Positions 2,209 to 48,949 of a stretch of DNA of 64,000 nucleotides are shown here, piece by piece. The stretch is taken from positions 1,860,001 through 1,924,000 of the forward strand of contig JANJGN010000071.1 of assembly GCA_026770705.1 (NCBI GenBank). Reading direction: 5' to 3'. Positions within the stretch are counted from its first letter, which is position 1. Each line of letters starts with the position of its first letter. This DNA is from Isurus oxyrinchus (lineage: Eukaryota). Position numbers and translations under genes: made by a program. The notes under the pieces were generated by a model. That model ran no database searches and was not told where the DNA came from. It worked only from the letters and a program-made list of their open reading frames with translations.

Positions 2209-3540
2209 CAGAAGAGTGTGATAGAGAGAGATTGTGAGTGTTAGAGAGAGAATGTGTGAGAGAGAGAGAGAGATAGAGCAGAAGAGTGTGATAGAGAGAG
2301 ATTGTGAGTGTTAGAGAGAGAATGTGTGTGTGAGAGAGAGAGAGATAGAGCAGAAGAGTGTGATAGAGAGAGATTGTGAATGTTAGAGAGAGAATGTGTG
2401 TGTGTGAGAGAGAGATAGAGAGCAGAAGAGTGCGATAGAGAGAGATTGTGAGTGTTAGAGAGAGAATGTGTGTGTGTGAGAGAGAGAGAGATAGAGAGCA
2501 GAAGAGTGCGATAGAGAGAGATTGTGAATGTTAGAGAGAGAATGTGTGTGTGTGACAGAGATAGAGCAGAAGAGTGTGATAGAGAAAAATTTTGTGAGTG
2601 TAAGAGCGAGAATGTGTGTGTGAGAGAGAGAGAGAGAGAGAGCAGAAGAGTGTGATAGAGAGAGATTGTGAATGTTAGAGAGAGAATGTGTGTGTGTGAG
2701 AGAGAGATAGAGCAGAGGAGTGTGATAGAGAGAGATTGTGAGTGTTAGAGAGAGAATGTGTGTGTGTGTGAGAGAGAGATAGAGCAGAAGAGTGTGATAG
2801 AGAGAGATTGTGAGTGTTAGAGAGAGAATGTGTGTGTGAGAGAGAGAGAGATAGAGCAGAAGAGTGTGATAGAGAGAGATTGTGAATGTTAGAGAGAGAA
2901 TGTGTGTGTGTGAGAGAGAGATAGAGAGCAGAAGAGTGCGATAGAGAGAGATTGTGAGTGTTAGAGAGAGAATGTGTGTGTGTGTGAGAGAGAGAGAGAT
3001 AGAGAGCAGAAGAGTGCGATAGAGAGAGATTGTGAATGTTAGAGAGAGAATGTGTGTGTGTGAGAGAGATAGAGCAGAAGAATGTGATAGAGAAAAATTT
3101 TGTGAGTGTAAGAGCGAGAATGTGTGTGTGAGAGAGAGAGAGAGAGAGAGCAGAAGAGTGTGATAGAGAGAGATTGTGAATGTTAGAGAGAGAATGTGTG
3201 TGTGTGAGAGAGAGATAGAGCAGAGGAGTGTGATAGAGAGAGATTGTGAGTGTTAGTGAGAGAATGTGTGTGTGTGAGAGAGAGAGAGAGAGCAGAAGAG
3301 TGTGATAGAGACAGATTGTGAGTGTTAGAGAGAGAATGTGTGTGTGAGAGAGAGAGAGATAGAGCAGAAGAGTGTGATAGAGAGAGATTGTGAGTGTTAG
3401 AGAGAGAATGTGTGTGTGTGAGAGAGAGAGATAGAGCAGAAGAATGTGATAGAGACAGATTGTGAGTGTTAGAGAGAAAATGTGTGTGTGTGTGAGAGAG
3501 AGAGATAGAGCAGAAGAGTGCGATAGATAGAGAGTGTGAG
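2080..3540. repeat. ~55-62-bp compound GA/GT satellite
   Basis: Unit 'gagcagaagagtgtgatagagagagattgtgagtgttagagagagaatgtgtgtgtg(ag)n' repeated more than 20 times; second array at 44640-45562. Confidence 0.95.
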
Positions 3541-3808
3541 GGCTAAACTCACTGAGAGAAAAAGCTGGACACCCAGCACAGGGAGTGAGGGAACAATGAA
3601 TTTTTGCCGTGTTTGGTGAATCGGTTTGCGATGTCCCTTCTCAATCTCTCCTTCCTTGTCTTGACATTAGATAATTCCCTGGGGCTGTTTAATTCCCTGA
3701 AAGGTGCCATTTAAACACAAGTTGTTGTTGTTTGAGGAAGAAACGCTGGGGACAATTTATGAAAAAGTCTCTGTCTTTATCATTTTCCATTTAGATGAGG
3801 AACTGAAG

Positions 3809-3854
3809 ATGGGAGAGGTCGGTCTGATATTGATCTTCATCAGCTTGCTGCAAG
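3809..3854 (+). pseudogene. Siglec-like gene A, signal-peptide exon (MGEVGLILIFISLLQ-G)
   Basis: ATG at 3809, hydrophobic core, phase-1 donor CAAG|gt at 3855, acceptor ttag at 3791-3794; ends SLLQ like the gene B leader. Confidence 0.8.
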
Positions 3855-4184
3855 GTACAAATTCATTACTGATCGGAACTCAGGGAATTGGATTCTTTCC
3901 TGGAGTGAGGAAGTGAACATTTAATTTTAGAGAACAGGGTTAGTGATCACACAGAGAGTGAGTGATTAGCGAGTCAGAGAATTTAGCAAAAGAAAAAGTC
4001 TCATACGGACTCGAAACACCAACTCTGTTTCTCTCTCCACAGATGCTGTCAGACCTGCTGAGTTTCTCCAGCATTTTCTGTTTGTGCATCAGAGAGCTTG
4101 TTTCAATAGGAATGACAGTGCATTTATATAGCACCTTTAATGCAGTAAAACATCCTTATTGCTTCACAGGATTCCCCCACAAGG

Positions 4185-4640
4185 GGTAACATCCCCTCAG
4201 CATCCACCCTGTCAAACCCCCCACCACCTCAGAATCTTATATGTTTCAATAAGATCACCTCTCATTCTTCTAAACTCCAATGGATACAGGGCCCAACCTG
4301 CTCAACATTTCCTCATAAGACAAACCCCCTTCATCCCAGGAATCAGCCCAGTGATCCTCCTCTGAACTGCCTCCAATGCAGAGTCTATCCCTCCCTAAGT
4401 AAGGAGACCAGAACTGTACACACTGCTCCTGATACAATCTCACCAACGCCCTGTATAGTTGTAGCAAGACTTCCCTCCTTTTATACTCCATCCCTTTGCA
4501 ATAAAGGCCAACATTCCACTTGCCTTCCTCATTCCGTGCTGTTCCTGAATGCTGACTTTCTGTGATTCATGTACATGGACACCCAGATCCCTCTGTACCG
4601 CATTCTGTAGACTCTCTCCATTGAAGTAATATTCTGCTTT
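4185..4640 (-). mobile_element. CR1-type LINE 3' fragment
   Basis: Minus-strand translation MEYKRREVLLQLYRALVR..CVQFWSPYL..GLSYEE.L.RLG, typical of the CR1 ORF2 C-terminus. Confidence 0.8.
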
Positions 4641-4674
4641 TTGATGTTCAGTCCCCTCCCTTGTTGCCTTTCAG

Positions 4675-4963
4675 GAGTGATGTCAGAGGGATAGTCTATG
4701 AAGGCGCTGCCTCGGAGGGCCATCAGCAGCTCTTGTGTGGTTATTCCGTGTAGCTTTGACTTTCCTTCCCACTCTTACACAGCACTGCACGGAGCTTGGT
4801 ATAAATATTGGTATAGATGGAAATATACCATCACATACACCAAAGATCCCAATTATGGGGTGGACACATTCGTGGGACGTGCTAAAATAATCGGCGACTT
4901 GGAAGGGAAGAATTGTTCGGTGAGGATTGACAGTCTCAGAGCTGAAGACAGTGACGTGTATTG
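4675..4963 (+). pseudogene. Siglec-like gene A, V-set Ig exon (pseudogenised)
   Basis: Acceptor ttcag|GA in phase 1; reads GVMSEG*SMK..SSCVVIPCSFDFP..HGAWYK..GRAKIIGDLEGKNCSVRIDSLRAEDSDVY; TAG at 4692-4694; truncated in the F strand by Gypsy sequence. Confidence 0.85.
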
Positions 4964-5363
4964 CACCCAATTCTAAATCTTTTCACCAATTAGTCGACCT
5001 CATGAAGATGTATTTTCAGCTGAAGCCGTGGGTAATAATGAAAAGGTTTAAGTTTAACTCCAGAGTAAGGGCCCAGGGAGAGTCCATCGCAACCTATACA
5101 GTGAAGTGGAAGCAGGTGACTGAGCACTGGGACCTCGGAGACACACTCAATGACATGTTGCGGGGCCGATTGGTTTGTGTCGTTCACCCCAACGCCATTC
5201 AGAGCCGTTTACTCGCAGAAGCCGACATCGATTTGAAGCGCACCATGGAAATAGCGCCAGGCATGGAAAGTGCTGGGAGAGACTGGCGGGATTTACAGGA
5301 TGTACAACATGGCACCAGTCCTCAGCTGGGACAGGAACCAACCACCGGGCGTGAGGCTCAAAC

Positions 5364-5398
<35 letters not shown>

Positions 5399-6330
5399 CC
5401 GCCAAGCGAGAGACAGTCTCTGCTGCTCCACAAACTAAAAGGCTTCGTGGGAGTATTTCAGCAGCAACTCCGAAGTTGGCCTGTTCTCGATGTGGGGGGG
5501 AGTGAGCTCGTACCGGACACCTGCAGGTTCAAGGGGGCAGAATGCCATCACTGCCACAAGAAAGGGGCGGGTAATAAAGCAATGCAGGGTGAAATCGAGA
5601 CAGCCCATCAGACAGTGCACCAACATGATGGAAGTGAATAATATCACAGAGCCTGAAGCTGCTGATACCGATGTCTATTCCCTGTCCAATGTCACAGTGG
5701 TAAAAACTGAACCTATAACCATCACAACCCAAGTGAATGGGCAGCCACTAGTAATGGGGCAGATACGGGAGCCTCAGACACAGTGGTGGAAGAGCCCACA
5801 TTTAAACAGCTAAATGAAGGAACCCAGACGCTGAATTTAGAGCCAACAATGGATCAGCTGAAGACACACACTGGAGAATCCATACAGGGAAAGGACCTGG
5901 TCCCAGTACCTGTGTCCTACAGGCAGCAGACAGCCCAGCTTCCAGTGATCATAGCGACAGGTGAGGGCCCTAGTCTTCTGGGCCGAGACTGGTTCCAGAA
6001 AACCAAGCTCAGCTGCTCTGAAATGTTTCACTGGAGGAGTTGCTGAGTTGCTGGGGGAATATGAGAGTGTATCTCGGAATGAGTTTGAAGAATTGAAGCA
6101 TCCTCACAGGCTGCAAGTGTCCCTCAGGTCAGAGTTGGTTCCACTGGAAAATCCTGAAGAGAAAGAAAGCGAATTCTGTGCCGCTCTGAGCAAACTGAAG
6201 AAACAGTTGGCAGGGAAGACCCAACCATGTCCAATGTTCCAGGAGGAAGGCAAGAGATACAAGGAAGAGACTGAAGAGCTGAAGATTCAGCTGAATGAAA
6301 CCAAAGAGGCAGTTACAGTATCACAACAAG
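4960..6330 (+). mobile_element. Degenerate Ty3/Gypsy LTR retrotransposon gag-protease fragment
   Basis: Gag-like 'KRFKFNSRVRAQGESIATY..LNDMLRGRLVC..IQSRLLAE', zinc-knuckle remnants CSRCGG and CHHCHKKG, protease-end motif GPSLLGRDW; frameshifted; no 5' LTR seen. Confidence 0.8.
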
Positions 6331-6334
6331 TTTA

Positions 6335-6710
6335 CAGTGCAGAAGGAGGCCATTCAGCCCCTTGAGCCTGTTACACAGGAACAGGAGGAGGCCATTCAGC
6401 CCCCTCAAGCCTGTTACACAGGAACAGGAGGAGGCCATTCAGTCCCCTCGAGCCTGTTACACAGGAACCAGAAGAGGCCCATTCAGCCCCCTCGAGACTG
6501 TTACACAGGAACCAGAAGAGGCCCATTCAGCCCCCTCGAGACTGTTACACAGGAACAGGAGGAGGCCATTCAGTCCCCTCGAGCCTGTTACACAGGAACC
6601 AGAAGAGGCCCATTCAGCCCCCTCAAGACTGTTACACAGAAACAGGAGGAGGCCATTCTGCCACTTATGTCCGTTATACAGGAACAGGAGGAGGCCATTC
6701 AGCCCCTTGT
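6335..6710. repeat. 39/40-bp tandem repeat (gagcctgttacacaggaacaggaggaggccattcagcccctc)
   Basis: About 9 direct copies. Confidence 0.9.
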
Positions 6711-7094
6711 AGGGTGTGGTGGTGTGTGTCAGCTTCACCTGCGACTTCTGAGCCGTCTGAATCGCTCCCACTCCCTGGGTTCTAGACCTTGGACTTATTC
6801 GGGGCTTGTCACAAAGTGCAGCAGACAACTGGTTTTGGTGCAAGACAAAAACTGAGTTTACTGAAGTCACAAATGAACTTATAACATTAGGATGACACTG
6901 AGATTATACAGACTTACAAAGTACACTGAGTTAAGAATGGGGAACACACGGCATAACGAGGGAGAATCACGCTACTAATGCCCTTACCCTTGTCCCACCC
7001 CCAAACCCTAACTAAATTGCACTAGGAGAGGTCAGGGGTCATGCTCACCAACCCAGGGTTCCTTGACAGTTGGAAATTTTGAGAACCCTTCAAG

Positions 7095-7710
7095 AGATGG
7101 GGAGGGTTACAGGGGCTGGAGGAGGTTACAGAGATAGGGAGGGTTGTAGGGGCTGGAGGAGGTTACAGAGATAAGGAGTGTTGTAGGGGCTGGAGGAGGT
7201 TACAGAGATAGGGAGGGTTGTAAGTGCTGGAAGCTGTTCCAGAGATAGGGAGGGTTGTAGGGGCTGGAGGAGGTTACAGGTATAGGGAGGGTTGTAGGGG
7301 CTGGAGGATGACACAGAGATAGGGCGAGTTGCAGGGGGTGGAGCAGGTTGTAGAGATAGGGAGGGTTGTAGGGACTGGAAGAGATTACAGAAATAGGGAG
7401 GGTTGTGGTGGTTGGAGGATGTTACAGAGATGGGCAGGATTGTCAAGGCTGGTGGAGGCTTGGGAGATTATTAGGGTTACAGTGGCTAGAGGAGGTGACA
7501 TGTATAGGGGTGTTGTCGGGCTGGAGGTTGTTACAGGGATAGGGAGGATTGTATGGGCTTGTGAAGGAGGTTACAGATATAGGGAGGGTTGTGGGAGGTG
7601 GAGGAGGTTACAGAGATGGGGAGGATTGTAGGGGCAGGTGGAGGTTACAGAGATAGGGAGGGTTGTAGGGGCTGGAGGAAAGGGACAGAGAGAGGAGGTT
7701 ACAGATATAG
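7095..7710. repeat. 33-bp G-rich minisatellite (gagatagggagggttgtaggggctggaggaggttaca)
   Basis: Tandem degenerate copies; same unit at 10330-11190, 46050-46290, 48950-50400, 54745-55125. Confidence 0.95.
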
Positions 7711-9749: not shown

Positions 9750-9965
9750 GTGTTGCGTCAATATGAACACATATCTGCACAAGGTGAAGGGCGTTGCGGA
9801 GGGACTGATAGTTCTCGGTGCCAGACAGTCAATGTCCCAGTGACCTTACTGCTGGTCCCAGGCCAGTGGGACAGGGAACATCGACACTGCAATATCCAGA
9901 AATGGGTGTGATACCACACAGCAACCCGCCCCCGGCTGTCCCCTTCAAGTGTTTCAGGTATAAGA
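9750..9965 (+). promoter_or_regulatory. Putative TATA promoter of the secreted-peptide (hepcidin-like) gene, copy 1
   Basis: TATAAG at 9959-9964, about 75-90 nt upstream of the ATGs; C/EBP-type TTGCGTCAAT at 9753-9762; GGTGCCAGAC at 9817-9826; GC box at ~9925. Confidence 0.5.
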
Positions 9966-10050
9966 GCAGGAAGCTCCTCTAGTTACAAACCAAAGCATCA
10001 AAGCAGAGCCAGAAGATCAGAAGAGACAGGCAGAGATGGGAAGCTCCCAG

Positions 10051-10128
10051 ATGAAATGGCGACTTGTCTTGTTCACTCTGACTTTGCTGCTCTCCCTGCA
10101 GCTGAGTCACTTCTTCTCCTTGTCGAGG
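10051..10128 (+). CDS. Signal-peptide exon 1 of a small secreted precursor, hepcidin-like (MKWRLVLFTLTLLLSLQLSHFFSLSR), copy 1
   Basis: Basic n-region plus Leu-rich h-region; in-frame upstream ATG at 10036; phase-0 donor AGG|gtaag at 10129. The exon is well supported; the hepcidin identity is inference. Confidence 0.6.
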
Positions 10129-10329
10129 GTAAGCTAAGAGATGTCCCTCTGGGTGAGGTGTTTCTTGCACATGACTCTACGTCTACCACCCAGATAGACT
10201 GGTCTCTTCCGCAGTTTGATATTATTATGTTCGTGCCTTTAATATTGTCGCCCTCTATGAATTTAACATCATTTCCTTCTGTCGTTTCCCCTGAAATTCT
10301 CATTCTTGTTTTCAATCCCTCCTCAGCCA

Positions 10330-11190
10330 CTCCCTATCTCTGTAACCTCCACCAGGCCTTACAACCCTCCCTATCTCTGTAACCTCCTCCAGCCCCTACA
10401 CCCCTCCCTATCTCTGTAACCTCCTCCAGCCGCTACAACCCTCCCTATATCTGTAACCTCCTCCAGCCCCTACAACAATCCCTATCTCTGTAACTTCCTC
10501 CAGCCCCTACAACTGTCCCTATCTCCGTAACCTCCTCCAGCCCCTACAACCCTCCCTATCTCTGTAACCTCCTCCAGCCCCTATAAACCTCCCTATCTCT
10601 GTAACCTCCTCCAGCCCCTACAACCCTACCTATCTCTGTAACCTCCCCCAGGCCCCACAACCCTCATGATCACTGTAACCTCCTCTAGACCCTACAACCC
10701 TCCCTATCTCTGTAACCTGCTCCAGACCCTACAACCCTCCCTATCTCTGTAACCTCCTCCAGGCCCTACAACCCTCCCTATCTCTGTAACCTCCTCCAGG
10801 CCCCACGACCCTCAGAATCACTGTAACCTCCTCCAGCCCCTACAATGCTCATGAACTCTATAACGTCCTCTCCACACTATAACTCTCCCTATCTCTGTAA
10901 CCTACTATGGCCCCTACAACAGTATCTATTTTGGTAACCTCCTCCAGCCTCTACAACCCTCCCTACCTCTGTAACCTCCTCCAGCCCCCACAACCCCCCC
11001 CATCTCTTTAACCTCCTACAGCCCCTACTCACCTCCCTATCTCTGTAACCTCCTACAGCCCCTACAACCTTCCCTATCTCTGTCACCTCCTACAGCCTCT
11101 AGAACCCTCCCTATCTCTGTTACCTCCTACAGCCTCTACAACCCTCCCTATCTCTGTAACCTCCTCCAGCCGGAACAACCCTACCTAAAT
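10330..11190. repeat. 33-bp minisatellite (C-rich strand on +)
   Basis: Tandem 'ccctatctctgtaacctcctccagcccctacaa'. Confidence 0.95.
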
Positions 11191-11935
11191 CTCTGGTCTG
11201 AGTCTCACTCCAGGGAATTCAGTCCCATAACGTCGGTCAACACTCCGTGCTGAGGGAGTGCTGGACTGTCAGAGGGTCAGTAGTGTGGAAGTGTTGCACT
11301 ATTGGAGGGACAGTACTGAGTGAGTGCTATACTGTCGGAGGTCAGTACTGAGGAAGTGCTGCATTGTTACAGGGTCAGTACTGTGGAAGTGTTGCACTGT
11401 CGGAGGGTCAGTACTGAGGTAGCGCTGCACTGACGGAGGGACAATACTGTGGGAGTGCAGCACTATCGAAGGGTTAGTACTGAGGGAGTGCTGCAGTGTC
11501 AAAGGGTTAGTACTGAGGGAGCACAACAATGTTGAATGAGACATTAAACCGAGTCCCCCGTCTGCCCTCTCGGGCGGGTGTGAAAGATCCCACAGCCACT
11601 ATTTGGAGGAAGAGCAGGGGGTGTTCTCCCCGGTGTCCTGGGACCAATATTTATCCCTCACCCAACATCACCAAAAACAGATGATCTAGGCCATGATCAC
11701 ATTGCTATTTGTGGGATCTTGCTGTGCACAAATCAGCTGCCACATTTCCTACAGTGTGAGTGCACTTCAAAAACATCCTTCAGTGGCTGTGAAATGCTTT
11801 GGGATGTGGTGAAAGGCGTTAGAGAAATGCAAGTCTGTCCTCCTCCCCCTCTCTCTCCTGTACCTCTCTCTCTCTCTCTCCCTCTCCCTCAATCCTCCTC
11901 TCACTTTCTCCCTGATAAATTCTTTCTTTTTGCAG

Positions 11936-11992
11936 GTTGACACTGCTTTAGGTTCTTCGACGATTGAGAAATCTGTGGATTCCCCGGACACG
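11936..11992 (+). CDS. 57-nt phase-0/0 exon 2, pro-region-like (VDTALGSSTIEKSVDSPDT)
   Basis: Strong polypyrimidine acceptor 'tctttctttttgcag|' and donor 'ACG|gtaggt'; in frame with the 10051-10128 exon. Confidence 0.55.
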
Positions 11993-13526
11993 GTAGGTGG
12001 AAATTCATTCCTTATTTTAAGGTTTCTCCCTGCTCGTTTCTTCCACAGAAAGTTTTCTGATTTCAAGCTGATTTCAGTGGCAGTCTGTCTCGGTTATACT
12101 CAGGAGGCAGGTTTGAAATCGAGCCCCCCCCGCCCCCTTTTTTTGCAAAGCTGGGAAGAGGCAATTCCAAGGAAGTGAACATATCCCCACAGGAATTTTA
12201 AATGTAACCCACGCCGGGAATAGTGAGAGGGAGACTGATCCAGCCTGGGAGTGGGTTAAAGAGAGGCTGGGAGTCGAGAGTCGGAGAGAGGGATGGAATG
12301 GGGGAGGGAGGGATTGGAAGAGAGAGACAGAGAGTGGGACGGGGAGGGGTGAAAGGGAAAGAACATAGGTGGGAGAGAGTGACAGAGGGAGAAATTAAAG
12401 AGATGCAGAGTGAGGGAAAGTGAAAAGGGAAGAGAGATTGTCCAAGAGAGAGAAATTAACAGGAAAGGGAGAGTTACAGAGTGAGCGAAAGGTACAAAAA
12501 TAGTGTGAGAGAGAGGGAGAGATACAGAGTGGGAGAAGGAGACAGGGGAGAGAGAGGGAGAGAGACAGGAAAAGGGAGAGAGGAGAGAAAGATTGGGAGA
12601 GAGGGCAATTGAGCGGAAGAGTAGGAGAGAGAGAGACAGGGAGAGGAGGAGTGGATGAGAGGAAGAGAGAGAGAGATATGGAGCAGGAGAACACCTCCTC
12701 CGGTCCCGATGTTCCTCCAAAATCTCTGACATTACTGCATCTCCCGGGTCCCCCTGATTCCCATCGCTCCACCATTGGTGGCCGTGCCTTCAGCTGCCTG
12801 GGGCCCTGAGCTCCGGAATACCCTCCCTTAACCTCTCTGCCTCTCTCTCTCTCTCTCCTTTAAGACGCTCCTTAAAAACTGACATCTTTGACCAAGCTTT
12901 TGGTCACCTAACCCTAATATCTCCATATGTGACTCAGTGTTAGACTTCTCTCTGATTTACGCTCCGGTAATGTGGGCTGGGACATTTTGCAATGCCAGAG
13001 GCGCTGTGTAAATGCAAGTTGTGAGTGTTATGTGGAAGGGAGACCCCAGGCGGCAGTCAGTGCCAGAGACTGGAGTCATTGTGCGCAGACCGTATCTAAT
13101 CTCTCCGAATGCACAATCGGTTTGACTGTCAGCCAAAGCACTTTTGATATTTGATCCTTCTAACTGTTTATAACCAGGCCTACATCAAACACCGAGAGGC
13201 TGGTTAATCAACAGACACCTTAGAGGATCGAGTGAAAGACAAAGAGGACTTGCATTTCTCTAGCGCCTTCCAACACATCAGGACGTCCCAAAGTGTTTCG
13301 CAGACAATCAAGTGCTTTTTTTCTTTCATGTCAGGTCACTGATGTACTGTGGGAAAAGAATCAGCCATTGGCGCACAGTAAGATCCCACAGACAGCGGCA
13401 TGATAATGACCAGCGCGCTCCCAGTACTTGCACTGCAAGTGTCAGTTCAGGATGTGTGCTCGATTCTCTGCAACTCTCAGCTCTGAGTTAAAAGGACCAC
13501 CAGGCATAATTGAGAAATTACCGAGC

Positions 13527-14075
13527 TGTCGGAGGGTCAGTACCGGCGGGGGGGCAGGACAGTCGGAGGGTCAGTACTGAGGGGGTGCTGCATTGTCAGA
13601 CGGTCAGTCTTGGAGTGCTGCACTGTCAGAGGGTCAGTACCGGCGGGGGACTGCACAGTCGGAGGGTCAGTACTGAGGGGGTGCTGCATTGTCAGACGGT
13701 CAGTACTGAGGGAGTGCTGCACTGTCAGAGGGTCAGGGTTAAGGGACTGCTGCACTGATGGAGGGTCAGTACTGAGTGAGTGCTGCACTGTCAGAGGGTC
13801 AGTGCTAAGGGAGTGCTGCACTGTTGGAGGGTCAGTACTGAGTGAGCGCTGCACTGATGGAGGGTCAGTTCCGAGGGAGTGCTGCACTGTCAGAGGGTCA
13901 GTGCTAAGGAAGTGCTGCACTGTCAGAGGGTCAGTGCTAAGGAAGTGCTGCACTGTACAGAGGGAGTGTGAGACTGACAGAGAGTCAGTAATGAGGGAGT
14001 GTGAGACTGACAGAGGGTCACTATTGAGGATGTGCTGCACAGTCCGGGGGGTCAGTACTGAGGGAGCACTGCACT
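13527..14075. repeat. 29-bp minisatellite (reverse orientation)
   Basis: Tandem 'gagggtcagtactgagggagtgctgcactgtca'. Confidence 0.95.
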
Positions 14076-14221
14076 GACATAGGTGGTTTCTTTCAGATGA
14101 CATGAGAGAGAGGGTTAAACCCACTGAGACAAGACTGACACTAATGAGGCTGCTCAATAATTTAACCCTATCAGTGCCAGTAAATAATGTGAGGATGTCT
14201 TCTGTTTCCATTTCTCTGTAG

Positions 14222-14470
14222 GGTAAACAGAACGTGCTGATTACTGAGCCCCGGAACACAACCAGAGACACAACTAGTGAGGGGGAGACCCCAGCTCCCC
14301 GGGGTCTCTCTGAAGGTGCATCGGGAGGCGATGCTGGACATTGGCACATCGACAATCCCAACGGCCTTCTCTACGCCAATCCCCAAGTATTGAGGATGTC
14401 CAGTGATGATGGGTCTGTCCACAGGGAAGAGGAGACGGAATACGCACAGATCAGGTTCGAGCATAACTGA
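14222..14470 (+). pseudogene. Orphan Siglec terminal cytoplasmic exon (LLYANP..TEYAQI)
   Basis: Acceptor tgtag|GGT, 249-nt open frame to TGA, paralogous to 35416-35664; no TM exon upstream. Confidence 0.8.
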
Positions 14471-14667
14471 ATGAGAAATGGGGAGTGGGAGTGAGGAGGT
14501 GTGGGGGTGGGGGTAGTGATTGAGATTCCTGGGAACAGGAAACAACCCACTGGGGGAGAGGGGGAGAGAGGGAGGAAGGGATGCGATTGGGCTGCGGTTG
14601 GTGTGGTTTGGAATGAAATGCTTCTCCAGAGAGGACTGGATGCTGAGCCACTGGGGATAGAGATTCA

Positions 14668-14708
<41 letters not shown>

Positions 14709-15059
14709 TCTTTGTCTTTCTTTCTGTGTCTGTCACTCATTCTCTATCTCCAGCTCCTCCTTTAAGATGCCCGTTAATAACTGACTTTGTTGACTCAGCT
14801 GTTGGTCTCCTGTCCCTTATATCTCCTCATGTGCCTCAGAGTCAGGTGAAGATGTGACTAACAATTCCCGGATGAGCCTTGGGACATTTTGCTACATTAA
14901 AGCTCCTATATAAATGCAAGTAGTTGCAGTAAGTCTGATCTGCTTCGATTAACAATGGAACCACAAAGGCTCCTTCGACAGGGCGTGTGTGCAGGAGGAT
15001 CCCAATAAATACATTGAGCTGTGAGATTTTTAATTCTTACATCGAATGTGGCTGTCACT

Positions 15060-15490
15060 GGTGATGCCAGCATTAATGCCCATCCCTAATTGCCCTTGAG
15101 AAGGTGGTGGTGATCAGCCTTCTTGACCCGCTGCAGTCCATGTGGTGTAGGTACACCCACAGTGCTGTTAGGGAGGGAGTTCCAGGATTTTGACCCAGTG
15201 ACAGTGAAGGAACGATGATATATTTCCAAGTCAGGATGGTGAGTGGCTTGGAGGGGAACTTCCAGGTGGTGGTGTTCCCATGTGTCTGCTGCCCTTGTCC
15301 ATCTAGATGGTAGAGGTCGTGGGTTTGGAAGGTGCTGTTGAAGGAGCCTTGCTGAGTTGCTGCAGTGCATCTTGTAGATGGTACACACACTGCTGCCACT
15401 GTGTGTTCGTGGTGGAGGGAGTGAATGTTTAATGTGGTGGATGGGGTGTAGATCAATCGGGCTGCTTTGTCCTGGATGGTGTCAAGCTTC
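15060..15490 (-). mobile_element. LINE 3' fragment
   Basis: Minus-strand 'DTIQDKAARL..HSLHH..TVAAVC..YKMHCS'; duplicate at 57440-57880. Confidence 0.7.
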
Positions 15491-15627
15491 TTGATTCTGT
15501 GCTTTGTATAGAACTGATTTAAAGAGACAGTCCCAGTCGTTGGTCTAAGATTACAGTGGGCTCTGTGTCTGTGCTACACTGACTCTCTGCTATATGATAA
15601 CCACAGTGTGATATTTTGTTATTTCAG

Positions 15628-15709
15628 GAGAAAGACAGCGATGGAGGAGAGAGTTTCAGGGACCAGTGACATTGTATTGACCCCCAGTCCACTCTCTGTG
15701 AAGCACCAG
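15628..15709 (+). pseudogene. Orphan Siglec juxtamembrane cytoplasmic exon (RKTAMEERVSGTSDIVLTPSPLSVKHQ)
   Basis: 82-nt phase 2/0 exon, paralogous to 34295-34376 and 58018-58099; no TM exon upstream. Confidence 0.8.
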
Positions 15710-15844
15710 GTACAGGAGCTGTTTACACTCACTCCAAAGCTTCTATCTCAGTGTGTAGACAACACATGTCCCAGATTCCCAGCCCAGTTACCCACTGATT
15801 TGTACCTGTGGAGTCAGCAATGGTTCAGTATCATGCTGTCTCTC

Positions 15845-16605
15845 TGTTATGACACAGCAACTGGTAAAGGCTGTTGTTTAAAATCCCAGAGGGAAACTTT
15901 AAACAACTGTCATAACCTATATTTCCCAGTGGAATGTTTGAGATGCAGCTCTAAATTCAGGAATAAGACCATCAGTTCTTGAGATGGGTTTATATCAAAC
16001 TACATGAGACATTTATTAATTTTCACAAGTTGATCATATGCACATGGCTACAAGCTAGTACTATCATAACTTTTTAACAAATTCCCAAACTAACGTCCTC
16101 TAAGACAACCCATAGACTTTAAGCAGATTCCAAGCGAAGCATTTTCACCTCACAAATTCCAAATGAGGTTCCTTTCACTTTGGTTCCTTTGCAGACAGGT
16201 GTAGGCTTACAGCTGCTTTGATGTTACAAGCCTCTGCTCTGCACACACACATACTGCTCAAGTTATACCCAGCTCTTCTCTTTGAATGTAAATTCTCATT
16301 GTATCATCAGGACCTTTGATCTCCATCTCTTCTAACTATAAATCCCGTTTCATAGTATCAATTTTATTAGTAATATAAACATTGATTGGTTTAAGAATTC
16401 ACTCCCAGGCTTTGAATCCTCCTTTTAAAAATGCAATATGCCTCTTTACCTCTTTGTTTACATCTCAAAACTACTATACATAAAAGTACCCAGACCGGCT
16501 GTCTTTAATCCAATTAAAACACACACACACACACCCACAGACTAAACCTCTGTTTAAAAAGACAATTTCCAATTACAATACATACATTAATAGATTCATA
16601 ACGCT
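15845..16605. mobile_element. Solo-LTR-like element (family also at 20214-21031, 58236-58968, 62150-62979; inverted copies at 35956-36850 and ending at 40540)
   Basis: Begins tgttatgac and ends ..tcataac; shared 5' block 'ggtaaaggctg..aaatcccagagggaaa..aaacaactgtcataac'. Confidence 0.55.
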
Positions 16606-16732
16606 CAGTCTCTGACCCTTCATCTCTCTCTCTCTCTCTCATCCTCTCTCTGATTACAAGATTCATGTTATTGAGCCTCACACCAGGCACCTGAGTGCAG
16701 AATCCAAGCCGACACTCGCCAGAGCCATTACC

Positions 16733-17012
16733 GAGGGAGTGCGAGACTGACAGAGGGTCAGTACTGAGGGAGTGCTGCACTGTCAGAGGGTCAGTACTGA
16801 GGGAGTGTTGCACTGTCAGAGGGTCAGTACTGAGGAAGACCTGTACTGTCGGAGGGTCAGTACTGAGGGAGCGCTGCACTGCTGGAGGGTCAGTACTGAG
16901 GGAGCGCTGCACTGTCGGAGGGTCAGTACTGAGGGAGTGCTGCACTGTTGGATGGTCAGCATTGAGGAAGTGCTGCACTATCGAAGGGTCAGTACTGAGG
17001 GAGCACTGCACT
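16733..17012. repeat. 29-bp minisatellite
   Basis: Tandem copies upstream of a tail exon. Confidence 0.9.
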
Positions 17013-17158
17013 GCCATAGGTGTTTTCTTTCATAAGACATGTGAGAGAGGGTTAAACCCACTGACCCACGACTGACACTAACGAGGCTGCAGAATATTTT
17101 AACCCTATCAGTGCCAGTAAATGATGTGAGGATGTCTTCTGTTTCCATTTCTCTGTAG

Positions 17159-17407
17159 GGTAAACAGAACGTGCTGATTACTGAGCCCCGGAACACAACC
17201 AGAGACACAACTAGCGAGGGGGAGACCCCAGCTCCCCGGGGTGTCTCTGAATGTGCAGTGGGAGGCGATGCTGGACATGGGAACCCCGACAATCCCGACG
17301 AGTTTCTCTACGCCAATCCCCAAGTCTTCAGGGTGCCCAGTGGTGATGGGTCTGTCCACAGGGAAGAGCAGACGGAATACGCACAGATCAGATTCAAGAG
17401 AAACTGA
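17159..17407 (+). pseudogene. Orphan Siglec terminal cytoplasmic exon (FLYANP..TEYAQI)
   Basis: 249-nt open exon, acceptor ctctgtag|GGT, nearly identical to 59314-59562. Confidence 0.8.
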
Positions 17408-18539
17408 GCGTGAAAAAGGCAGAGGTGGTCAGGAGGTTTGTGGATGGTGGCAGGGATGAAGATTCTTGGGAACATGAGACAACCCACTGGGGGAGAGGGG
17501 GAGAGAGGGAGGAAGGGACTGAATGGGTCTGTGGTTGGTGTGGTTTGGAATGAAATGTTTCCCCAGTGACGACTTGATGCTGAGTCATTGGGGACAGAGA
17601 TTCAGTNNNNNNNNNNNNNNNNNNNNNNNNNNNNNNNNNNNNNNNNNNNNNNNNNNNNNNNNNNNNNNNNNNNNNNNNNNNNNNNNNNNNNNNNNNNNNN
17701 NNNNNNNNNNNNNNNNNNNNNNNNNNNNNNNNNNNNNNNNNNNNNNNNNNNNNNNNNNNNNNNNNNNNNNNNNNNNNNNNNNNNNNATTAACTGGCTTTG
17801 TGAAATCAGCTTTTTGTCACCTGTCCCTAATACCTCATTATGTGTCTCAGAGATGGATTTATATGTAGGTAACAATCCCCTGAAGAGATTTGGGACAGTT
17901 TGTTACATTAAGTGTGCCATATAAATGCAAGTTGTTGCAGGAAAGTTGATCTGCCTCGATTCAGAATGGTAATTCGGAGGGTCCATCGACAGGGCGTGTG
18001 TGCAACAGCCTCGCAATAAATGCATTGCACGGCAACAACTAAGCATGTCCTTTGATGCTGATGCATCCCAGTACTGCTGTGTGGACACATCACAACCGAG
18101 GGACTGCCTGACTGCGTGCAGCCAACATGGCCGAATAGTAATTAGCAGAAATGTGATGTCACTGAACTTTGTTGACATTTCAGAAAGTGCTTTCTGAATT
18201 CTGCAACTTGTTTATTCTGTGATAGATTACAAGAAGCCTTTGCATTTTCTATAATATTACATTTATTGTCACAAGGGATTGAAATGCCCAGACACCACCA
18301 CCTGGAAGTTCGCCTCCAAGACACACATCATCCTGATTTTGAAATATATCGCCATTCCTTCACTGCCACTTGGTCAAAATCTTGGACTTCCTTCTCTAAC
18401 TGCATTGTGGGTGTACCTACACCACATGGAGTGCAGAGGGTCCGGAAGGCAGCTCACCACCACCTTCTCAAGGTAATTAAGGATGGGCCATAAATGCTGG
18501 CCTAGCCAGTGATGCCCACTTCCCATGGAAGAATGAATA

Positions 18540-22120: not shown

Positions 22121-22160
22121 ATGATCGGGAAATCTTTCTTCCTCCTGTCACTTCTGCAAG
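22121..22160 (+). CDS. Siglec-like gene B, signal-peptide exon (MIGKSFFLLSLLQ-V)
   Basis: Acceptor at 22078, 'gaccATGa' start, phase-1 donor CAAG|gtaa; joins in frame to the V exon. Confidence 0.85.
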
Positions 22161-25100
22161 GTAATACCATTGTCAGCTCGGACAGATTTATGGTTAATAG
22201 TCTTTGTTAAAGATCATTCTTATTGAGCTCTGATAGGGAACTGATTCAGCAGTGATCCAGTGTACAAACTCACACCAAGTCCCATTCACCCATCACCCCT
22301 GTGCTCACTGATGTACACTGACTCCCTGTCTGACAGCAGAATTGGAGTAGACCAGTGGTCTTGAAGGGTTGTAGGGGCTGGAGGAGTTTACAGGGATAGG
22401 CAGGTTTGTAGCAGCGAGAGCAGAATCTTGAAATTCAGGTGCTGTCGGACGTTGGTCAGTGAGCGATGGGGATTGATGTGTTGAGTAGAGAAGCAGGGAT
22501 AAAAACTGGGGGATGAAGCCTATCCTAATGTTAGGTCTCCGATAGCAATGACCTGAAATTTGTGTCCTTTGCTGCCTTTATTCAAAACTTCCCATGAAGA
22601 CAACACAGCAGCTCCTAGAATAGACAGGTTGTTCAGTGTCACACTTCCTGTCCATTCTCACCTTGCTAGATACTTCAATAAGAGAGCAAGATAACTGAAA
22701 GAGAGAAGAAAGGCAAAGCCGACTGGGTGTAAAGGTGTCAAATATTCTGAGTTATCTGATGAGTGTCTCTGATCTGCTGCATAGTTTAAATTTCACGGAA
22801 TCTGGGCACGTTGCAGCTCAGAGAGAGACCATTGCCTCACTGCCTGAAAGAGCGGTGGAAGCAGATTCAACAGGAACTTTCAGAAGGGGAACTGGATAAA
22901 TACTTGAAGGGAAATTTGCAGGAATGTGCGAAAGGTGTTGGAGAGGAATTGGGAAAGAGTCAGCACATGCACGATGAGTCACATGAGCTCCTCCTGTGTT
23001 GTATCAATCAACAATCAGACAATTTAAGACCCTTATCAGCAAATCTTCAGAATCCTGTTGAATCACAGATGTTTCAGAAGGACAGGGAACAAGAGGTTTC
23101 TGGTATCAACACTTCATGTGGGGCCCAGTTCAGTTTGAACAAAAAAAATGACAACAGCATCTTTGAAAGTCATGAAACCAACACAACGGCAACTCCGACA
23201 CATGCAGAGCTCAGGCTAGAGGCACTTTGTTAGTGTGTTTCACAGTCTCTGCTGGAGTAGGGTCAGTGCTGAGCTTGGGGACAAGTCAGTCTACAATGCT
23301 GCATCGGAATCAACAATACAACAATATGGGGTTTGGATCAGAAATAATCCATTAGACAATGAGGATCCAAAGAGATTCCTTCGACAATGAGGATCCGAAG
23401 AGATTCCTTAGACAATGAGAATCCAAAGAGATTCCTTATTCCATTGGTTGTCTAACTGGGGTCCATGATTTTCCAAGGGGTCCTTGGCAGAATCAAATTA
23501 TCGAGCAATAGTGTGTAAAACACCGGAGAGAACGGGAAAGGTGGGATCAATGGAAAACTGTTCACTCTGTTTACACTAATGGGAGTTAGTCTCAGTAATG
23601 GAGACCATGAAACTATCATCGATTGTCATACACACCCATCTGGTTCACTAATGGCCTTTAGGGAAGGAAATCTGCCGTCTATATCTGGTCTGGCCTCCAT
23701 GTGACTCCAGACTCATAGCAACGTGGTTCCTCTGAAATGTCCGAGCAAACCATCCAGTTCTCACCATGCTAGAAACTTCAATAAGGGAGTAAGATAACTG
23801 AAAGAGAGAAGGAAGGCAAAGCTGCTCATGTGGATAGATGTCAAATATCCTGAGTGATCATGATTGTCTCTACTCTGCTACAGAGATTATGTCACGGGAC
23901 ATTAGAGATGGGCAGCAAATGCTGGCCTTGGCAGCGACGCCCACATCCCATGAATGAATACATTTACAAAATCTTATTAATTGGAGGGATAAAAGGGTTA
24001 AAGAGTTGCTGATGGAGGAACAGACACCCAATTTTTTTCGTAATTTACAGTTAGGAACCAATAATATTTTGTTTCAAGTAGACGAGGTTTGAGATTTAAG
24101 ATGCTTGCCAAGAGAATAAAGCTACAAGATTCCATGGCTTTTAAACAAATAAAAATAAACGTTACTGCACCAGCTCAGAAAGATAAAATAATTCACAATA
24201 TCCACCTTATACCCTAACATTCTGGATTAATATGAGCTCATGTGAATTAACAGGCAAACTGTGGTCTCACAGCCACATTACTCATTAAATTGTAAACGCG
24301 ACCAAGATAGAGCCCATGGATTTCACAACAACCCACCCGGACATCAGTGAACACTGTCAGTCAACCAATCTCACTGAAACTCTGTTTCTCTCATGAGGGA
24401 TTCCAATCTTCAACTTCAAAGATCTTGCCTTGGAATTCTCTCCAAAAGTCGCTTCAACTCGGATGGCCTCAGTGACGTTCCACCTCACAGCGTTTCCATC
24501 TCTTCTCCTGAGGCTCCATTGCCCTGGATTCCCGACTATATACTCAAGTACCACTAGGTTTAGATGAAAGGTTTTGATTGACTGGGTAGACAGAGAATGT
24601 TCCCTCTTGTGGGCAGGAGAATAACTAGAGGACGAGTGATTGGTGATTCCTTAAACATTGAAGAGGGAATGAACACCAATCAGATTGAATCAGATTAGCC
24701 AATCAGCTGTGTTGAAGAGCAGACAGGAATGTTAGGCTAATTAGTGATTCATGACGGTGATAATGGGGGGAGTTCTGAGTGGAAGACTGGCTTCACTAAG
24801 GGGAAGCGGTAGCAGAGAGGTATTGTCACTGGGCTAGTATTCCAGAGGCCCCGGGTGATGCTCTGGGGCCCTGGGTGTGAATCCCATCACAGCTGATGAA
24901 TGGAATTAAAAAGCCTGGTTCACTGATCACCTATAGGGAAGGAAATCTGCCACCCTTACCCAGTCTGGCCTACATGTCACTCCAAACCCAAAGCAATGTG
25001 GTTGACTCTTAAATGCCTCTGCTGGACATGGGATGGGTAATAAATCCCATGAATGAATAATTCGAAAAAACTAAACAGGGTCCTGAGGACCATGAGCCAA

Positions 25101-25291
25101 TGTAGAATGAACTTGTCCACTCCTGTGTCCAGGATTCTCTTCCAACCATTGTGAAACCTTGGGGAGTTCCTTGTGTGTCCTGTAGATGGTCCACACTGCA
25201 GCCACTGTGCCCCAATGATGGAGGGAGTGGATATCAAGTCTAATGGAACTACAAACCGTCCAGAATTAAATATTGATATTTCTCTCCCCAG

Positions 25292-25657
25292 TTGGATGGT
25301 CACAAGAGTGGAAAGGTGACACTCCACGAGAGATGACAGCACAGAAAGGTTCGTGTGTACAGATTCCGTGTCATTACAGTTATCCTTCAAATTTGGAAAA
25401 CCAACAACGAGGTGGAGTCTGGTTTAATAATGAGGAACGGGGAAGATCGTCTATAGCCTTTCACTCCAAGGATCACAATCATGAGTTACCACGGTTCCGC
25501 CATCGGACCCAGCTGTCTGGAGACCTGAAAGATGGCGACTGTTCCCTGATTATAAACAACATCAGACGGGAAGATGCAGGACCTTATTTTTTCAGAATAG
25601 AATTTGACAGCAGGAATAGATACAGCTACTATCCTGTAACCCAGCTTCACGTTTCTG
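25292..25657 (+). CDS. Siglec-like gene B, V-set sialic-acid-binding-type domain
   Basis: 366-nt phase 1/1 exon; GSCVQIPC (two Cys), GVWF, GDCSL, DAGPYFFRIE with the F-strand Arg at 25594-25596, G-strand YSY. Confidence 0.92.
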
Positions 25658-26028
25658 GTAAGTGCTGTGTTATAATTACTCAAAAATTCACATTCAACAC
25701 TCAATGGGAAACAACACAAACTGTGACGTTTACATATTAACACAAAACACAGCTTATTATAACACACTGTCTGATTCTCAATAACCTGGTGATGGCTTCC
25801 AGTTCAGTCCTAACGTAACCTTTAATACTCACTTTAATATCAATGATTAAATGTATTCCACTCCCATCGATCTCTCTAATCGTGTCTAACAGTCTATCAG
25901 GATAGTTAAAACAACTCAGTTCTGATATCATCCTTGTAAAAGTGCTTTCTCTTGTGGGACTGTGATTTCTATTTGAACTGATGCTTCACGTTATATTTCT
26001 CTAAAAGGATCCATTCTCTGTGTGTTAG

Positions 26029-26325
26029 ATTTCACAGATAAACCCACAATATTCCCTGCTGAAATTATTGCAGGAAAGCGTGTGGATGTAAGCTGCACCT
26101 TCAACACAACGTGCAATGGAACAGCAGCACCTGTCTTAACCTGGGACACTCCCACTGACGTACCTGGATCAGTCTCAAACACTGTAACTCAGCATGGTGT
26201 CACTCTGACCTATACTTCTGTTCTGACCCTGATCCCATCACTCAAACACCACGGACACACTCTCAGCTGCAGAGTGAGATATCCATCTGTTTCATCGGAG
26301 CGGACCCTCGTACTAACTGTGCAAG
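26029..26325 (+). CDS. Siglec-like gene B, domain 2 (C-type Ig)
   Basis: 297-nt phase 1/1 exon; SCTFNTTC (extra Cys for the D1-D2 disulfide), LTW, SVLTLIP..HG..LSCRV. Confidence 0.92.
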
Positions 26326-26449
26326 GTAAGTACCGACTCCCTTCCATCTACATTAGCTAGAAAGCTCCACATAGTACACTGCAAGATCCCACAACTGCAT
26401 TGTGTTTAGCAACAAATCAATAGTCTTTAATTGATACAAATTCACCTCT

Positions 26450-26905
26450 GACACTGCAGCAGTCCCTGAATACTGACTCTCCAACACTGCAGCATTCCCT
26501 CACTACTGACCCTTCGACAGTGCAGCACCCCCTCAGTACTGAATCTTCGCAGTGCAGCACTCCCTCAGTACTGACCCTCTGAGAGTGCAGCACCCCCTCA
26601 GTTCTGACCCTCAAACAGTGCAGCACCCCCTCTTTACTGACCATCTGACAGTGCAGCACTCCCTCAGTACTGACCCACTGACAGTGCAGCACTCCCTCAG
26701 TACTGACCCTCTGACAGTGCAGCACTCCCTCAGTACTGACACACTGACAATGCAGCACTCCCTCAGTACTGACCGTCTGACACTACAGCACTCCCTCAGT
26801 ACTGACCCTCTGACAGTGCAGTACTCCCTCAGTACTGACACACTGACAGTGCAGCACTCCCTCAGTACTGACCCTCTGTCATTGCAGCACTCCCTCAATA
26901 CTGAA
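26450..26905. repeat. 29-bp minisatellite (intronic)
   Basis: About 15 tandem copies. Confidence 0.95.
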
Positions 26906-27036
26906 CTGATTTGTCTGCCTGGATTACGGGCTTTGTGGTGAAAGAACCTGCATTGATATCAAACCTTTCACATTCTCAGTGTCTTTCAAAGTGCTTCACA
27001 GTCAGTTTAAGTTAATTGATGTTTATTTGTTTTTAG

Positions 27037-27318
27037 ATGCACCACAGAATCTCTCAATTAATTCTCTTGATATGATTAACGCTTCATCGATCAACATAAT
27101 TGAGGGGAATTCTGCAGTGATAATCTGCTCTGTCGAGAGCTTCCCAGCTTCTAACCTGACGTGGCGACATCTTAATGTCCCAATGAACAGAACAAGTTCC
27201 AACAATGAGCTGTGGTTGGTGATTCCTCACGTTACATCCAGGGACACTGGAGACTATCAGTGTGTGGCAGAGAATGAACATGGAGCAGTGGAGGGGTTCA
27301 TAACCATCACTGTGGAAC
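27037..27318 (+). CDS. Gene B C2-set Ig exon 1 of 6
   Basis: 282 nt, phase 1/1; EGNSAVIICSVESFPASNLTW..DTGDYQCVAENEHG. Confidence 0.9.
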
Positions 27319-27356
27319 GTGAGTTACTGCAAACTTCAACATCACTCACACACACA

Positions 27357-27392
<36 letters not shown>

Positions 27393-27991
27393 GACACACA
27401 TGCAGAAGGACACACAACCTTAACTCACACACACACACACGCACAGACAGACACACGTGCGCACACACACAAACACACATGCGTGCATGCACACACAGAT
27501 CCTTGTTGTGCAGAAACATACACACACACAAGCCAACACACACATACACACACAAAAACGTGTGGGTACCCTCTCCTCTCTCAGTGCTGCACTGGAGTCT
27601 CGGTATCAGCTCCGATTCTTTGTTGATGGAAGGTAAAGTCCAGATCAACAAGACCCTGAACTGGATGAGCAACCTCCTGAACAGTGAATTGTAGATTTAC
27701 CCCTCAGTTCTCCATCGATCAAATACAATTCATTGCCTTTGAAGCCCTTGGCGACATCCTGAGGATCTGAAAGGGAGTTTCCTGCATTCTAGATAGACAC
27801 CTCCACTGGTGGGAGAATGTAACTGCAGTGTGACAGTTTACATAGGCAGTGCCCGTTGTAAATGTGAAATAAGTTCTTATCCTGAGGGAAGGTACCTGGA
27901 AATGCATTCAGACATCAGATACAGAGACATGATGCATGGAGTCTTGCTGTGCACTATATTTGCTCATATTAAAATCTTTATATGTTTTTAG

Positions 27992-30679: not shown

Positions 30680-30715
30680 GTGAGTTACTGCAAACTTCAA
30701 CATCACTCAGACACA

Positions 30716-30756
<41 letters not shown>

Positions 30757-48369: not shown

Positions 48370-48585
48370 GTGTTGCGTCAATATGAACACATATTTGCAC
48401 AAGGTGAAGGGCGTTGCGGAGGGACTGATAGTTCTCGGCGCCAGACAGTCAATGTCCCAGTGACCTTACTGCTGGTCCCAGGCCAGTGGGACAGGGAACA
48501 TCGACACTGCAATATCCAGAAATGGGTGTGATACCACTCAGCTACCCACCCGCGGCTGTCCCCTTCAAGTGTTTCAGGTATAAGA
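48370..48585 (+). promoter_or_regulatory. Putative TATA promoter of the hepcidin-like gene, copy 2
   Basis: TATAAG at 48579-48584; GGCGCCAGAC at 48437-48446; TTGCGTCAAT at 48373-48382; ATTTGCACAA at 48393-48402. Confidence 0.5.
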
Positions 48586-48670
48586 GCAGGAAGCTCCTCT
48601 AGTTACAAACCAAAGCATCAAAGCAGAGCCAGAAGATCAGAAGAGACAGGCAGAGATGGGAAGCTCCCAG

Positions 48671-48748
48671 ATGAAATGGCGACTTGTCTTGTTCACTCTG
48701 ACTTTGCTGCTCTCCCTGCAGCTGAGTCACTTCTTCTCCTTGTCGAGG
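48671..48748 (+). CDS. Signal-peptide exon 1 (hepcidin-like), copy 2; exon 2 absent
   Basis: Identical to 10051-10128, including the donor. Confidence 0.55.
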
Positions 48749-48949
48749 GTAAGCTAAGAGATGTCCCTCTGGGTGAGGTGTTTCTTGCACATGACTCTAC
48801 GTCTACCACCCAGATAGACTGGTCACTTCCGCAGTTTGATATTATTATGTTCGTGGCTTTAATATTGTCGCCCTCTATGAATTTAACATCATTTCCTTCT
48901 GTCATTTCCCCTGAAATTCTCATTCTTGTTTTCAATCCCTCCTCAGCGA

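What the first reader, a model, noticed from the sequence alone, without database searches (positions are those of the whole stretch)
9750..14470. Hepcidin-like promoter and prepro exons lacking the mature-peptide exon, spliceable in frame to a Siglec signalling tail
Seen: a TATA promoter, a phase-0 signal exon (10051-10128) and a 57-nt phase-0/0 exon (11936-11992). The next recognisable exon is the phase-0 Siglec tail (14222-14470). Splicing all three gives an uninterrupted 127-aa ORF: MKWRLVLFTLTLLLSLQLSHFFSLSR-VDTALGSSTIEKSVDSPDT-GKQNVLITE...TEYAQIRFEHN. Known: HAMP has three exons (signal exon, short pro-region exon, then an RxxR + Cys-rich exon), and human HAMP lies immediately next to the Siglec genes MAG and CD22. 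Inference: these are hepcidin exons 1-2 swept into the Siglec duplication unit. I found no RxxR/8-Cys exon in the window, so this may be a young chimeric gene whose product would be a secreted version of a normally cytoplasmic tail.
Basis: partly seen in the sequence, partly recalled or inferred. Interest (0 to 1): 0.82.

Follow-up and report, generated by a model that had tools for sequence, protein, structure and literature searches.

The report
Truncated hepcidin spliced onto Siglec tails
A partial copy of a shark hepcidin gene (promoter, signal exon and pro-region exon, but no hormone exon) sits in front of the tail-coding exons of a Siglec immune-receptor gene and matching RNA is spliced onto them in frame; this is most likely a transcribed by-product of rearrangement, not a working new gene.

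Summary
Exon 1 (10036/10051-10128), the 57-nt exon (11936-11992) and the tail exon (14222-14470) have the stated splice sites and phases.

- **Splicing:** contigs of run X1 carry both predicted GT..AG junctions, 10128|11936 and 11992|14222.
- **Hepcidin origin:** exon 1 is 29/31 and exon 2 is 16/19 identical to the prepro region of a basking-shark protein that carries the Pfam Hepcidin domain.
- **Missing exon:** no hepcidin exon 3 is in the window.
- **Siglec tail:** the tail exon matches the C-termini of shark receptors that NCBI names Siglec or CD33-like.

- The ORF starts at the upstream ATG, 10036.
- A donor inside the tail exon (after 14454) joins in frame to a juxtamembrane exon (15628-15709). 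By phase arithmetic the frame then continues into a second tail exon (17159-17407), about 237 aa. This mirrors the 3' half of a double-tail basking-shark Siglec.
- The tail shows no purifying selection (dN/dS 0.9-1.5).

The scan found the same chimera before on other DNA of this genome (s1-866030, s1-868551, s1-866042). The spliced RNA therefore cannot be assigned to this copy. The locus is real but most likely a non-functional by-product of rearrangement.

The parts
9959..9964 (+). TATA box (TATAAG) of the hepcidin-type promoter
   Evidence: X1 depth jumps between bins 9800-9999 and 10000-10199, which fits a start near 9990.
10036..10128 (+). The donor after 10128 is in phase 0.
   Evidence: 29/31 identical to residues 1-31 of Cetorhinus hepcidin P0002. 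Joint 10128|11936 in 11 X1 contigs.
10330..11187 (+). 37-bp minisatellite (23 copies) in intron 1. Homology to unit B ends at or within it.
11936..11992 (+). Hepcidin exon 2 (pro-region, 19 aa, phase 0/0)
   Evidence: 16/19 identical to P0002 residues 32-50. The only copy in the window. Joints on both sides.
13178..13207 (+). Start of a cryptic alternative exon. It reads AYIKHREAG then a stop after exon 2.
   Evidence: Joint 11992|13178, GT..AG, 1 X1 contig at depth 844. Sequence.
13526..14040 (+). 33-bp SINE-type tandem array. The left edge of the Siglec-derived block (13808 onward) lies inside it, so it is the likely recombination breakpoint.
   Evidence: 13808-14667 matches 16734-17604 at 85%.
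14222..14470 (+). Siglec cytoplasmic tail exon (tail', 82 aa plus stop). Keeps LLYANP and TEYAQI. Has an internal phase-2 donor after 14454.
   Evidence: 85-86% nt identity to the other tail exons. 73% aa identity to both tails of Cetorhinus Siglec-8-like P0004. Joints 11992|14222 and about 14454|15628.
15628..15709 (+). Siglec juxtamembrane exon (phase-2 acceptor, RKTAMEERVSG...KHQ). In frame with the 14454 donor.
   Evidence: 25/27 identical to the second juxtamembrane segment (JM2) of P0004.
17159..17407 (+). Second Siglec tail exon (82 aa plus stop), the end of the double-tail 3' half
   Evidence: The loose end at 15710 in X1 reads the start of a tail exon.
48370..48940 (+). Second copy of the promoter plus exon 1 (98.4% identical, exon identical), without exon 2, upstream of a Siglec V exon

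Best explanation
This is a partial duplicate of a shark hepcidin gene. It keeps the TATA promoter, the signal-peptide exon and the pro-region exon, and it has lost exon 3, which carries the furin site and the 8-Cys peptide.

It now lies directly upstream of the 3' half of a Siglec-type receptor gene with a duplicated tail module (tail1, juxtamembrane exon, tail2). That half has no leader, Ig or transmembrane exons.

The hepcidin exon 2 donor is in phase 0 and so is the tail exon acceptor. Transcripts from the hepcidin-type promoter therefore splice in frame into the tail exon. They give a 132-aa ORF, or about 237 aa through the internal donor at 14454, the juxtamembrane exon and the second tail.

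Shown:
- homology of both halves
- absence of exon 3 and of Ig/TM exons
- phases of the exons
- spliced RNA contigs with these junctions

Inferred:
- The fusion arose by deletion or unequal recombination inside the 33-bp repeat array at 13526-14040.
- The product would enter the secretory pathway carrying tyrosine motifs that only work in the cytoplasm, so it is a non-functional by-product that was then copied along with the tandem unit.
For: - **Hepcidin homology:** exon 1 29/31 and exon 2 16/19 identical to a protein with Pfam Hepcidin at E 1.5e-11.
- **Not a Siglec leader:** the Siglec leader differs in sequence and phase.
- **Exon 3 absent:**
- **No Ig or TM exon between 10129 and 15627:**
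- **Tail identity:** the tail matches C-termini of V-set/Ig_CD22 + TM receptors named Siglec-8, Siglec-12 or CD33-like.
- **Double-tail precedent:** Cetorhinus P0004 shows TM-JM1-tail1-JM2-tail2 with the same '...YAQIR|RKTA...' junction.
- **Spliced RNA:** joints 10128|11936, 11992|14222 and 14454|15628, all GT..AG.
- **No constraint on the tail:** tail' dN/dS is 0.87-1.54 against 0.62-0.85 among the tails of intact genes.
- **No nearby polyA signal:** none within 425 nt after the tail' stop.
- **Promiscuous splicing elsewhere:** Cetorhinus isoforms X1 and X3 also join hepcidin exons 1-2 to unrelated 3' exons.
Against: - The tail' frame is still open and keeps both tyrosine motifs.
- X1 depth on the tail' exon is high (56,937).
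- Earlier notes report the same chimera at three other places in this genome. That could mean retention rather than recent copying.
- dN/dS on 246 nt has little power.
- Reads were laid at 90% likeness or more, from contigs, so the junction contigs may come from paralogous copies.
- The breakpoint could not be mapped because no intact hepcidin gene DNA was reachable.
Confidence: 0.8

Rival explanations
1. It is a working new gene. The strong hepcidin-type promoter and signal peptide export a soluble, N-glycosylated, tail-derived polypeptide with a function of its own.
For: Open frame of 132 or about 237 aa. In-frame splices seen in RNA at high depth. Several copies in the genome according to earlier notes.
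Against: dN/dS is about 1 or above on tail'. There is no domain, Cys pattern or furin site. ITIM/ITSM motifs need cytoplasmic kinases. No such protein is annotated among the hits in public shark proteomes. A cryptic isoform ends after 9 codons.
Confidence: 0.07
2. This copy is silent. The spliced contigs all come from near-identical chimeric copies elsewhere in the genome.
For: At least three other such loci are noted. X1 intron contigs differ from the window by 1-3% (table 8). Contigs cannot be assigned to one copy.
Against: Some X1 contigs are identical to the window (10206-10350 and 11545-11737 have 0 differences). The promoter, splice sites and frame are all intact here. Most X1 depth at variable tail' positions carries the window's letters (table 3).
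Confidence: 0.25
3. It is an assembly artefact. A normal three-exon hepcidin gene lost exon 3 through collapse of repeats during assembly.
For: Intron 2 holds long tandem arrays. The window has nine N gaps.
Against: No gap lies in 9750-14470. An RNA contig joins 11992 directly to 14222, so the chimeric order exists in transcripts. X1 contigs cover 11965-12188, 12867-13206 and 13233-13528 colinearly.
Confidence: 0.04
4. Exon 1 is simply the leader exon of the Siglec gene, and the 57-nt exon is a chance ORF. This was my own first reading.
For: A copy of exon 1 sits 2.7 kb upstream of a Siglec V exon in unit B.
Against: The phase-0 donor does not fit the phase-1 V exon. The real leader at 22122 is different. 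Both exons match hepcidin. Both junctions are seen in RNA.
Confidence: 0.01

Closest known systems
Hepcidin (HAMP) gene. Nearest sequence: Cetorhinus maximus LOC144671611 isoform X2, XP_078389754.1
   Same: TATA promoter. Exon 1 is the signal peptide (29/31 aa) and exon 2 is the 19-aa pro-region (16/19 aa). Both exons end in phase 0. The gene lies among Siglec genes, as HAMP lies beside MAG and CD22 in human (own knowledge). The shark hepcidin and Siglec proteins sit on one 13.67-Mb Cetorhinus contig.
   Different: No exon 3, so there is no RxxR site and no 8-Cys peptide. It cannot make a hepcidin.
CD33-related or CD22-like Siglecs of sharks, especially the double-tail Cetorhinus 'Siglec-8' XP_078389619.1
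   Same: Tail exon, juxtamembrane exon and second tail in the same order, with the same internal splice ('YAQIR|RKTA'). TEYAQI is an ITSM-like motif. Tail' shares 'GHWH' with tail1 of that protein.
   Different: No leader, V-set, C2 or transmembrane exon in this transcription unit. The proximal motif LLYANP misses the ITIM +3 position.
Chimeric genes and transcripts born by partial duplication and exon shuffling (such as jingwei in Drosophila, or fusion transcripts in primate segmental duplications; own knowledge)
   Same: The 5' half of one gene is placed before the 3' exons of a neighbour. Compatible intron phases give an in-frame fusion mRNA.
   Different: No sign of selection or function here. 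The fusion puts cytoplasmic motifs behind a secretion signal.
Cetorhinus LOC144671611 isoforms X1 and X3
   Same: The same hepcidin exons 1-2 are spliced to non-hepcidin 3' exons.
   Different: Their 3' exons are unrelated to Siglec tails, and that locus still has exon 3.

Membership tests
Hepcidin (Pfam PF06446) | Signal peptide and pro-region homologous to hepcidin preproproteins | tested here: met
   29/31 and 16/19 identity to P0002, which carries PF06446.
Hepcidin (Pfam PF06446) | Furin-type RX(K/R)R site followed by the 8-cysteine mature peptide (exon 3) | tested here: not met
   No match in the window. Pfam finds no Hepcidin domain in any of the exon translations scanned.
Siglec (CD33-related or CD22-like) | N-terminal V-set domain (Ig_CD22 type), C2 domains and a transmembrane segment | tested here: not met
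   None between 10129 and 15627. TM exons occur only at 33253-33420 and 57127-57294.
Siglec (CD33-related or CD22-like) | Cytoplasmic tail with ITIM and ITIM-like/ITSM tyrosine motifs | tested here: met
   The tail is homologous to C-termini of receptors with V-set/Ig_CD22 domains that NCBI names Siglec or CD33-like. TEYAQI is kept. The proximal LLYANP deviates at +3.
Chimeric (fusion) gene | Parts from two parent genes joined in frame in a transcript | tested here: met
   Phase arithmetic and joints in X1 contigs. The copy of origin is not resolved.
Chimeric (fusion) gene | Evidence of function (constraint, conservation, protein) | tested here: inconclusive
   dN/dS is 0.87-1.54 on 246 nt. 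No annotated counterpart among the hits. No proteome data.

The most novel reading that the evidence does not exclude
The hepcidin-Siglec fusion has been kept in several copies because its secreted, glycosylated tail polypeptide, or its very abundant transcript, does something. It could act as a decoy, or as a new liver-derived plasma peptide. That would make it a documented case of gene birth by phase-compatible exon shuffling in a shark immune cluster.
Probability: 0.06. Interest if true: 0.7.

Novelty: new member of a known kind. Interest (0 to 1): 0.33.

Why it matters
This is a clean, RNA-supported example of how tandem duplication in an immune gene cluster shuffles exons. Phase-0 hepcidin exons are placed before phase-0 Siglec tail exons and give an in-frame hybrid message from a very strong promoter.

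It matters for annotation. These loci should not be called hepcidin or Siglec genes. Counts of 'hepcidin' RNA from exons 1-2 in this shark are inflated by such copies.

It also shows that shark Siglecs can carry a duplicated tail module joined through a splice donor inside the first tail exon. As biology it is probably a dead end rather than a new function.

Tried and rejected
- **Pfam on single exons:** no Hepcidin hit for exon 1 or exon 2, and nothing for the tails. This was expected, because the model matches residues 53-87 of P0002, the exon-3 part.
- **Word search with tail' (82 aa, candidates of 45-143 aa):** no hit. This says nothing about longer proteins.
- **Finding hepcidin relatives of exon 1:** the query had to be lengthened by reference to window:9964-10128, which is the open 5' UTR frame plus exon 1.
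- **The look-up of encoding contigs for P0002:** meant to fetch an intact hepcidin gene and map the breakpoint.
- **The joined 127-, 132- and 237-aa models:** Exons were searched apart and frames were checked by arithmetic.
- **Promoter motifs:** no GGCGCC, TTCNNNGAA or CACGTG upstream of the start. This is not informative without comparators.
- **Literature:** no paper on shark hepcidin-Siglec fusions or shark Siglec tails turned up. One paper only lists hepcidin among nurse-shark plasma proteins (PMC9207270).
- **My first reading (Siglec leader exon plus chance ORF):** rejected.
Full report
**Observation**

- TATAAG lies at 9959.
- The signal exon ends at 10128 before GTAAGC.
- The 57-nt exon 11936-11992 lies between TTGCAG and GTAGGT.
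- A further exon starts at 14222 after CTGTAG and stops at 14468-14470.
- All three are joined in phase 0. The translations are 26, 19 and 82 aa, and exon 1 gives 31 aa from the better-placed upstream ATG at 10036.
- No N gap lies in 9750-14470.

**Context**

The window is a tandemly duplicated Siglec-like cluster.
- Unit A (1-22053) parallels unit B (43244-64000).
- Promoter plus exon 1 (9750-10320) recurs at 48370-48940 with 98.4% identity, and the exon itself is identical.
- The 57-nt exon is unique in the window.
- Intact Siglec-type exon sets lie at 22122-35661 (leader, V, C2, six repeated C2, TM, juxtamembrane, tail) and at 51485-59559.

**Is exon 1 a Siglec leader?**

No. This was my first reading. 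The cluster's leader (22122-22161, MIGKSFFLLSLLQ) ends in phase 1, as the V exons require. Exon 1 here ends in phase 0 and would frameshift into the V exon at 51485.

**Is it hepcidin?**

Yes, for exons 1 and 2.
- Pfam does not see the short exons.
- A word search with window:9964-10128 found only Cetorhinus maximus LOC144671611 isoforms.
- Isoform X2 (P0002, 88 aa) carries Pfam Hepcidin at residues 53-87 (E 1.5e-11, 44.8 bits against a cut-off of 27).
- Its residues 1-31 match exon 1 at 29/31, and its residues 32-50 match exon 2 at 16/19.
- Isoforms X1, X2 and X3 share residues 1-50 and diverge exactly where the window's exon 2 ends.
- tblastn with P0002 and a six-frame cysteine scan find no exon 3 anywhere in the window.

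**Is the third exon a Siglec tail?**

Yes.
- It is 85-86% identical in DNA to the tail exons at 17159, 35416 and 59314.
- A full HMMER scan of 1.84 billion representatives finds it at the C-terminus of proteins with V-set/Ig_CD22 and Ig domains and a transmembrane segment.
- NCBI names these proteins Siglec-8, Siglec-12 or CD33-like, in Cetorhinus and Carcharodon.

**Expression**

Run X1 (contigs, organism A) carries four GT..AG joints:

| Joint | Contigs | Depth |
|---|---|---|
| 10128\|11936 | 11 | 10,779 |
| 11992\|14222 | 1 | 4,352 |
| 11992\|13178 | 1 | 844 |
| about 14454\|15628 | 1 | 5,054 (also seen in X7) |

- Contigs that skip introns with exact GT..AG ends show that X1 holds spliced RNA.
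- The 13178 exon stops after nine codons.
- Reads were laid at 90% likeness or more, and earlier notes list three more chimeric loci in this genome. The junctions therefore prove the chimeric mRNA type, not the activity of this particular copy.

**New points**

- The donor after 14454 is in phase 2 and the exon 15628-15709 has a phase-2 acceptor. The frame therefore runs on through RKTAMEER...KHQ.
- By phase, it then continues into the second tail exon 17159-17407, about 237 aa. The 15709|17159 joint itself lay outside the stretch that was laid. Only a loose end at 15710 that reads the start of a tail exon was seen.
- The same layout, TM-JM1-tail1-JM2-tail2 with '...TEYAQIR|RKTATEER...', is annotated in Cetorhinus XP_078389619.1. 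Its tail1 shares 'GHWH' with tail'.
- Tail' is therefore not a stray exon. It is the first tail of a double-tail Siglec gene whose leader, Ig, TM and JM1 exons are missing here.
- There is no polyA signal within 425 nt of the tail' stop.

**Origin (inferred)**

The Siglec-derived block begins at about 13808, inside a 33-bp SINE-type array at 13526-14040. Such arrays are common across the cluster. Deletion or unequal recombination there would remove hepcidin exon 3 and the Siglec 5' exons.

**Function**

- Tail' against the other tails gives dN/dS of 0.87-1.54. The tails of intact genes give 0.62-0.85 among themselves. The power is low, but there is no sign of constraint.
- Behind a signal peptide, the ITIM/ITSM-type tyrosines would face the lumen.
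- No chimeric protein was found in public proteomes.
- Cetorhinus isoforms X1 and X3 show that hepcidin exons 1-2 readily splice to whatever lies downstream.
- I conclude that this is a transcribed by-product, with about 6% left for a real new function.

**Limits**

- The joined models were not searched.
- The scan found this same kind of locus before on other DNA of this genome (s1-866030, s1-868551, s1-866042).

Noticed in passing
window 48370-51853: A second copy of the hepcidin promoter plus exon 1 has no exon 2. It lies 2.7 kb upstream of a Siglec V exon (51485). The phase-0 donor and the phase-1 acceptor do not fit, so a direct splice would stop after about 14 codons.
   Followed up: partly
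window 14222-17407; Cetorhinus XP_078389619.1 (P0004): Shark Siglecs can carry a duplicated juxtamembrane-plus-tail module. The modules are joined through a splice donor inside the first tail exon ('YAQIR|RKTA'), which gives four tyrosine motifs in one tail.
   Followed up: partly
window 7093-7698, 10330-11187, 48950-50393, 54735-55147, 22365-22411: A 37-bp minisatellite occurs in both orientations. It is found in hepcidin intron 1, upstream of the promoter, inside a Siglec gene, and as a single unit in the leader-V intron of the Siglec at 22122. It is a possible substrate for the rearrangements.
   Followed up: no
window 4698-6855: A divergent V-set-like exon (Pfam V-set E 2.5e-5) runs into retroelement-like ORFs. 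This segment is absent from unit B, where 45563-46062 stands in place of 3540-7473.
   Followed up: no
window 26982-32541: Six near-identical C2-type Ig exons lie in tandem in one Siglec gene (75-86% aa identity to P0004 residues 49-170).
   Followed up: no
Cetorhinus LOC144671611 (P0001, P0003): NCBI isoforms X1 and X3 join hepcidin exons 1-2 to unrelated 3' exons. The end of X3 (…VRVTVLNIKAAFD) weakly resembles a stretch at window 35855-35902 (10/16 aa, E 0.028); I take it for a transposon reverse-transcriptase motif, which was not tested.
   Followed up: no
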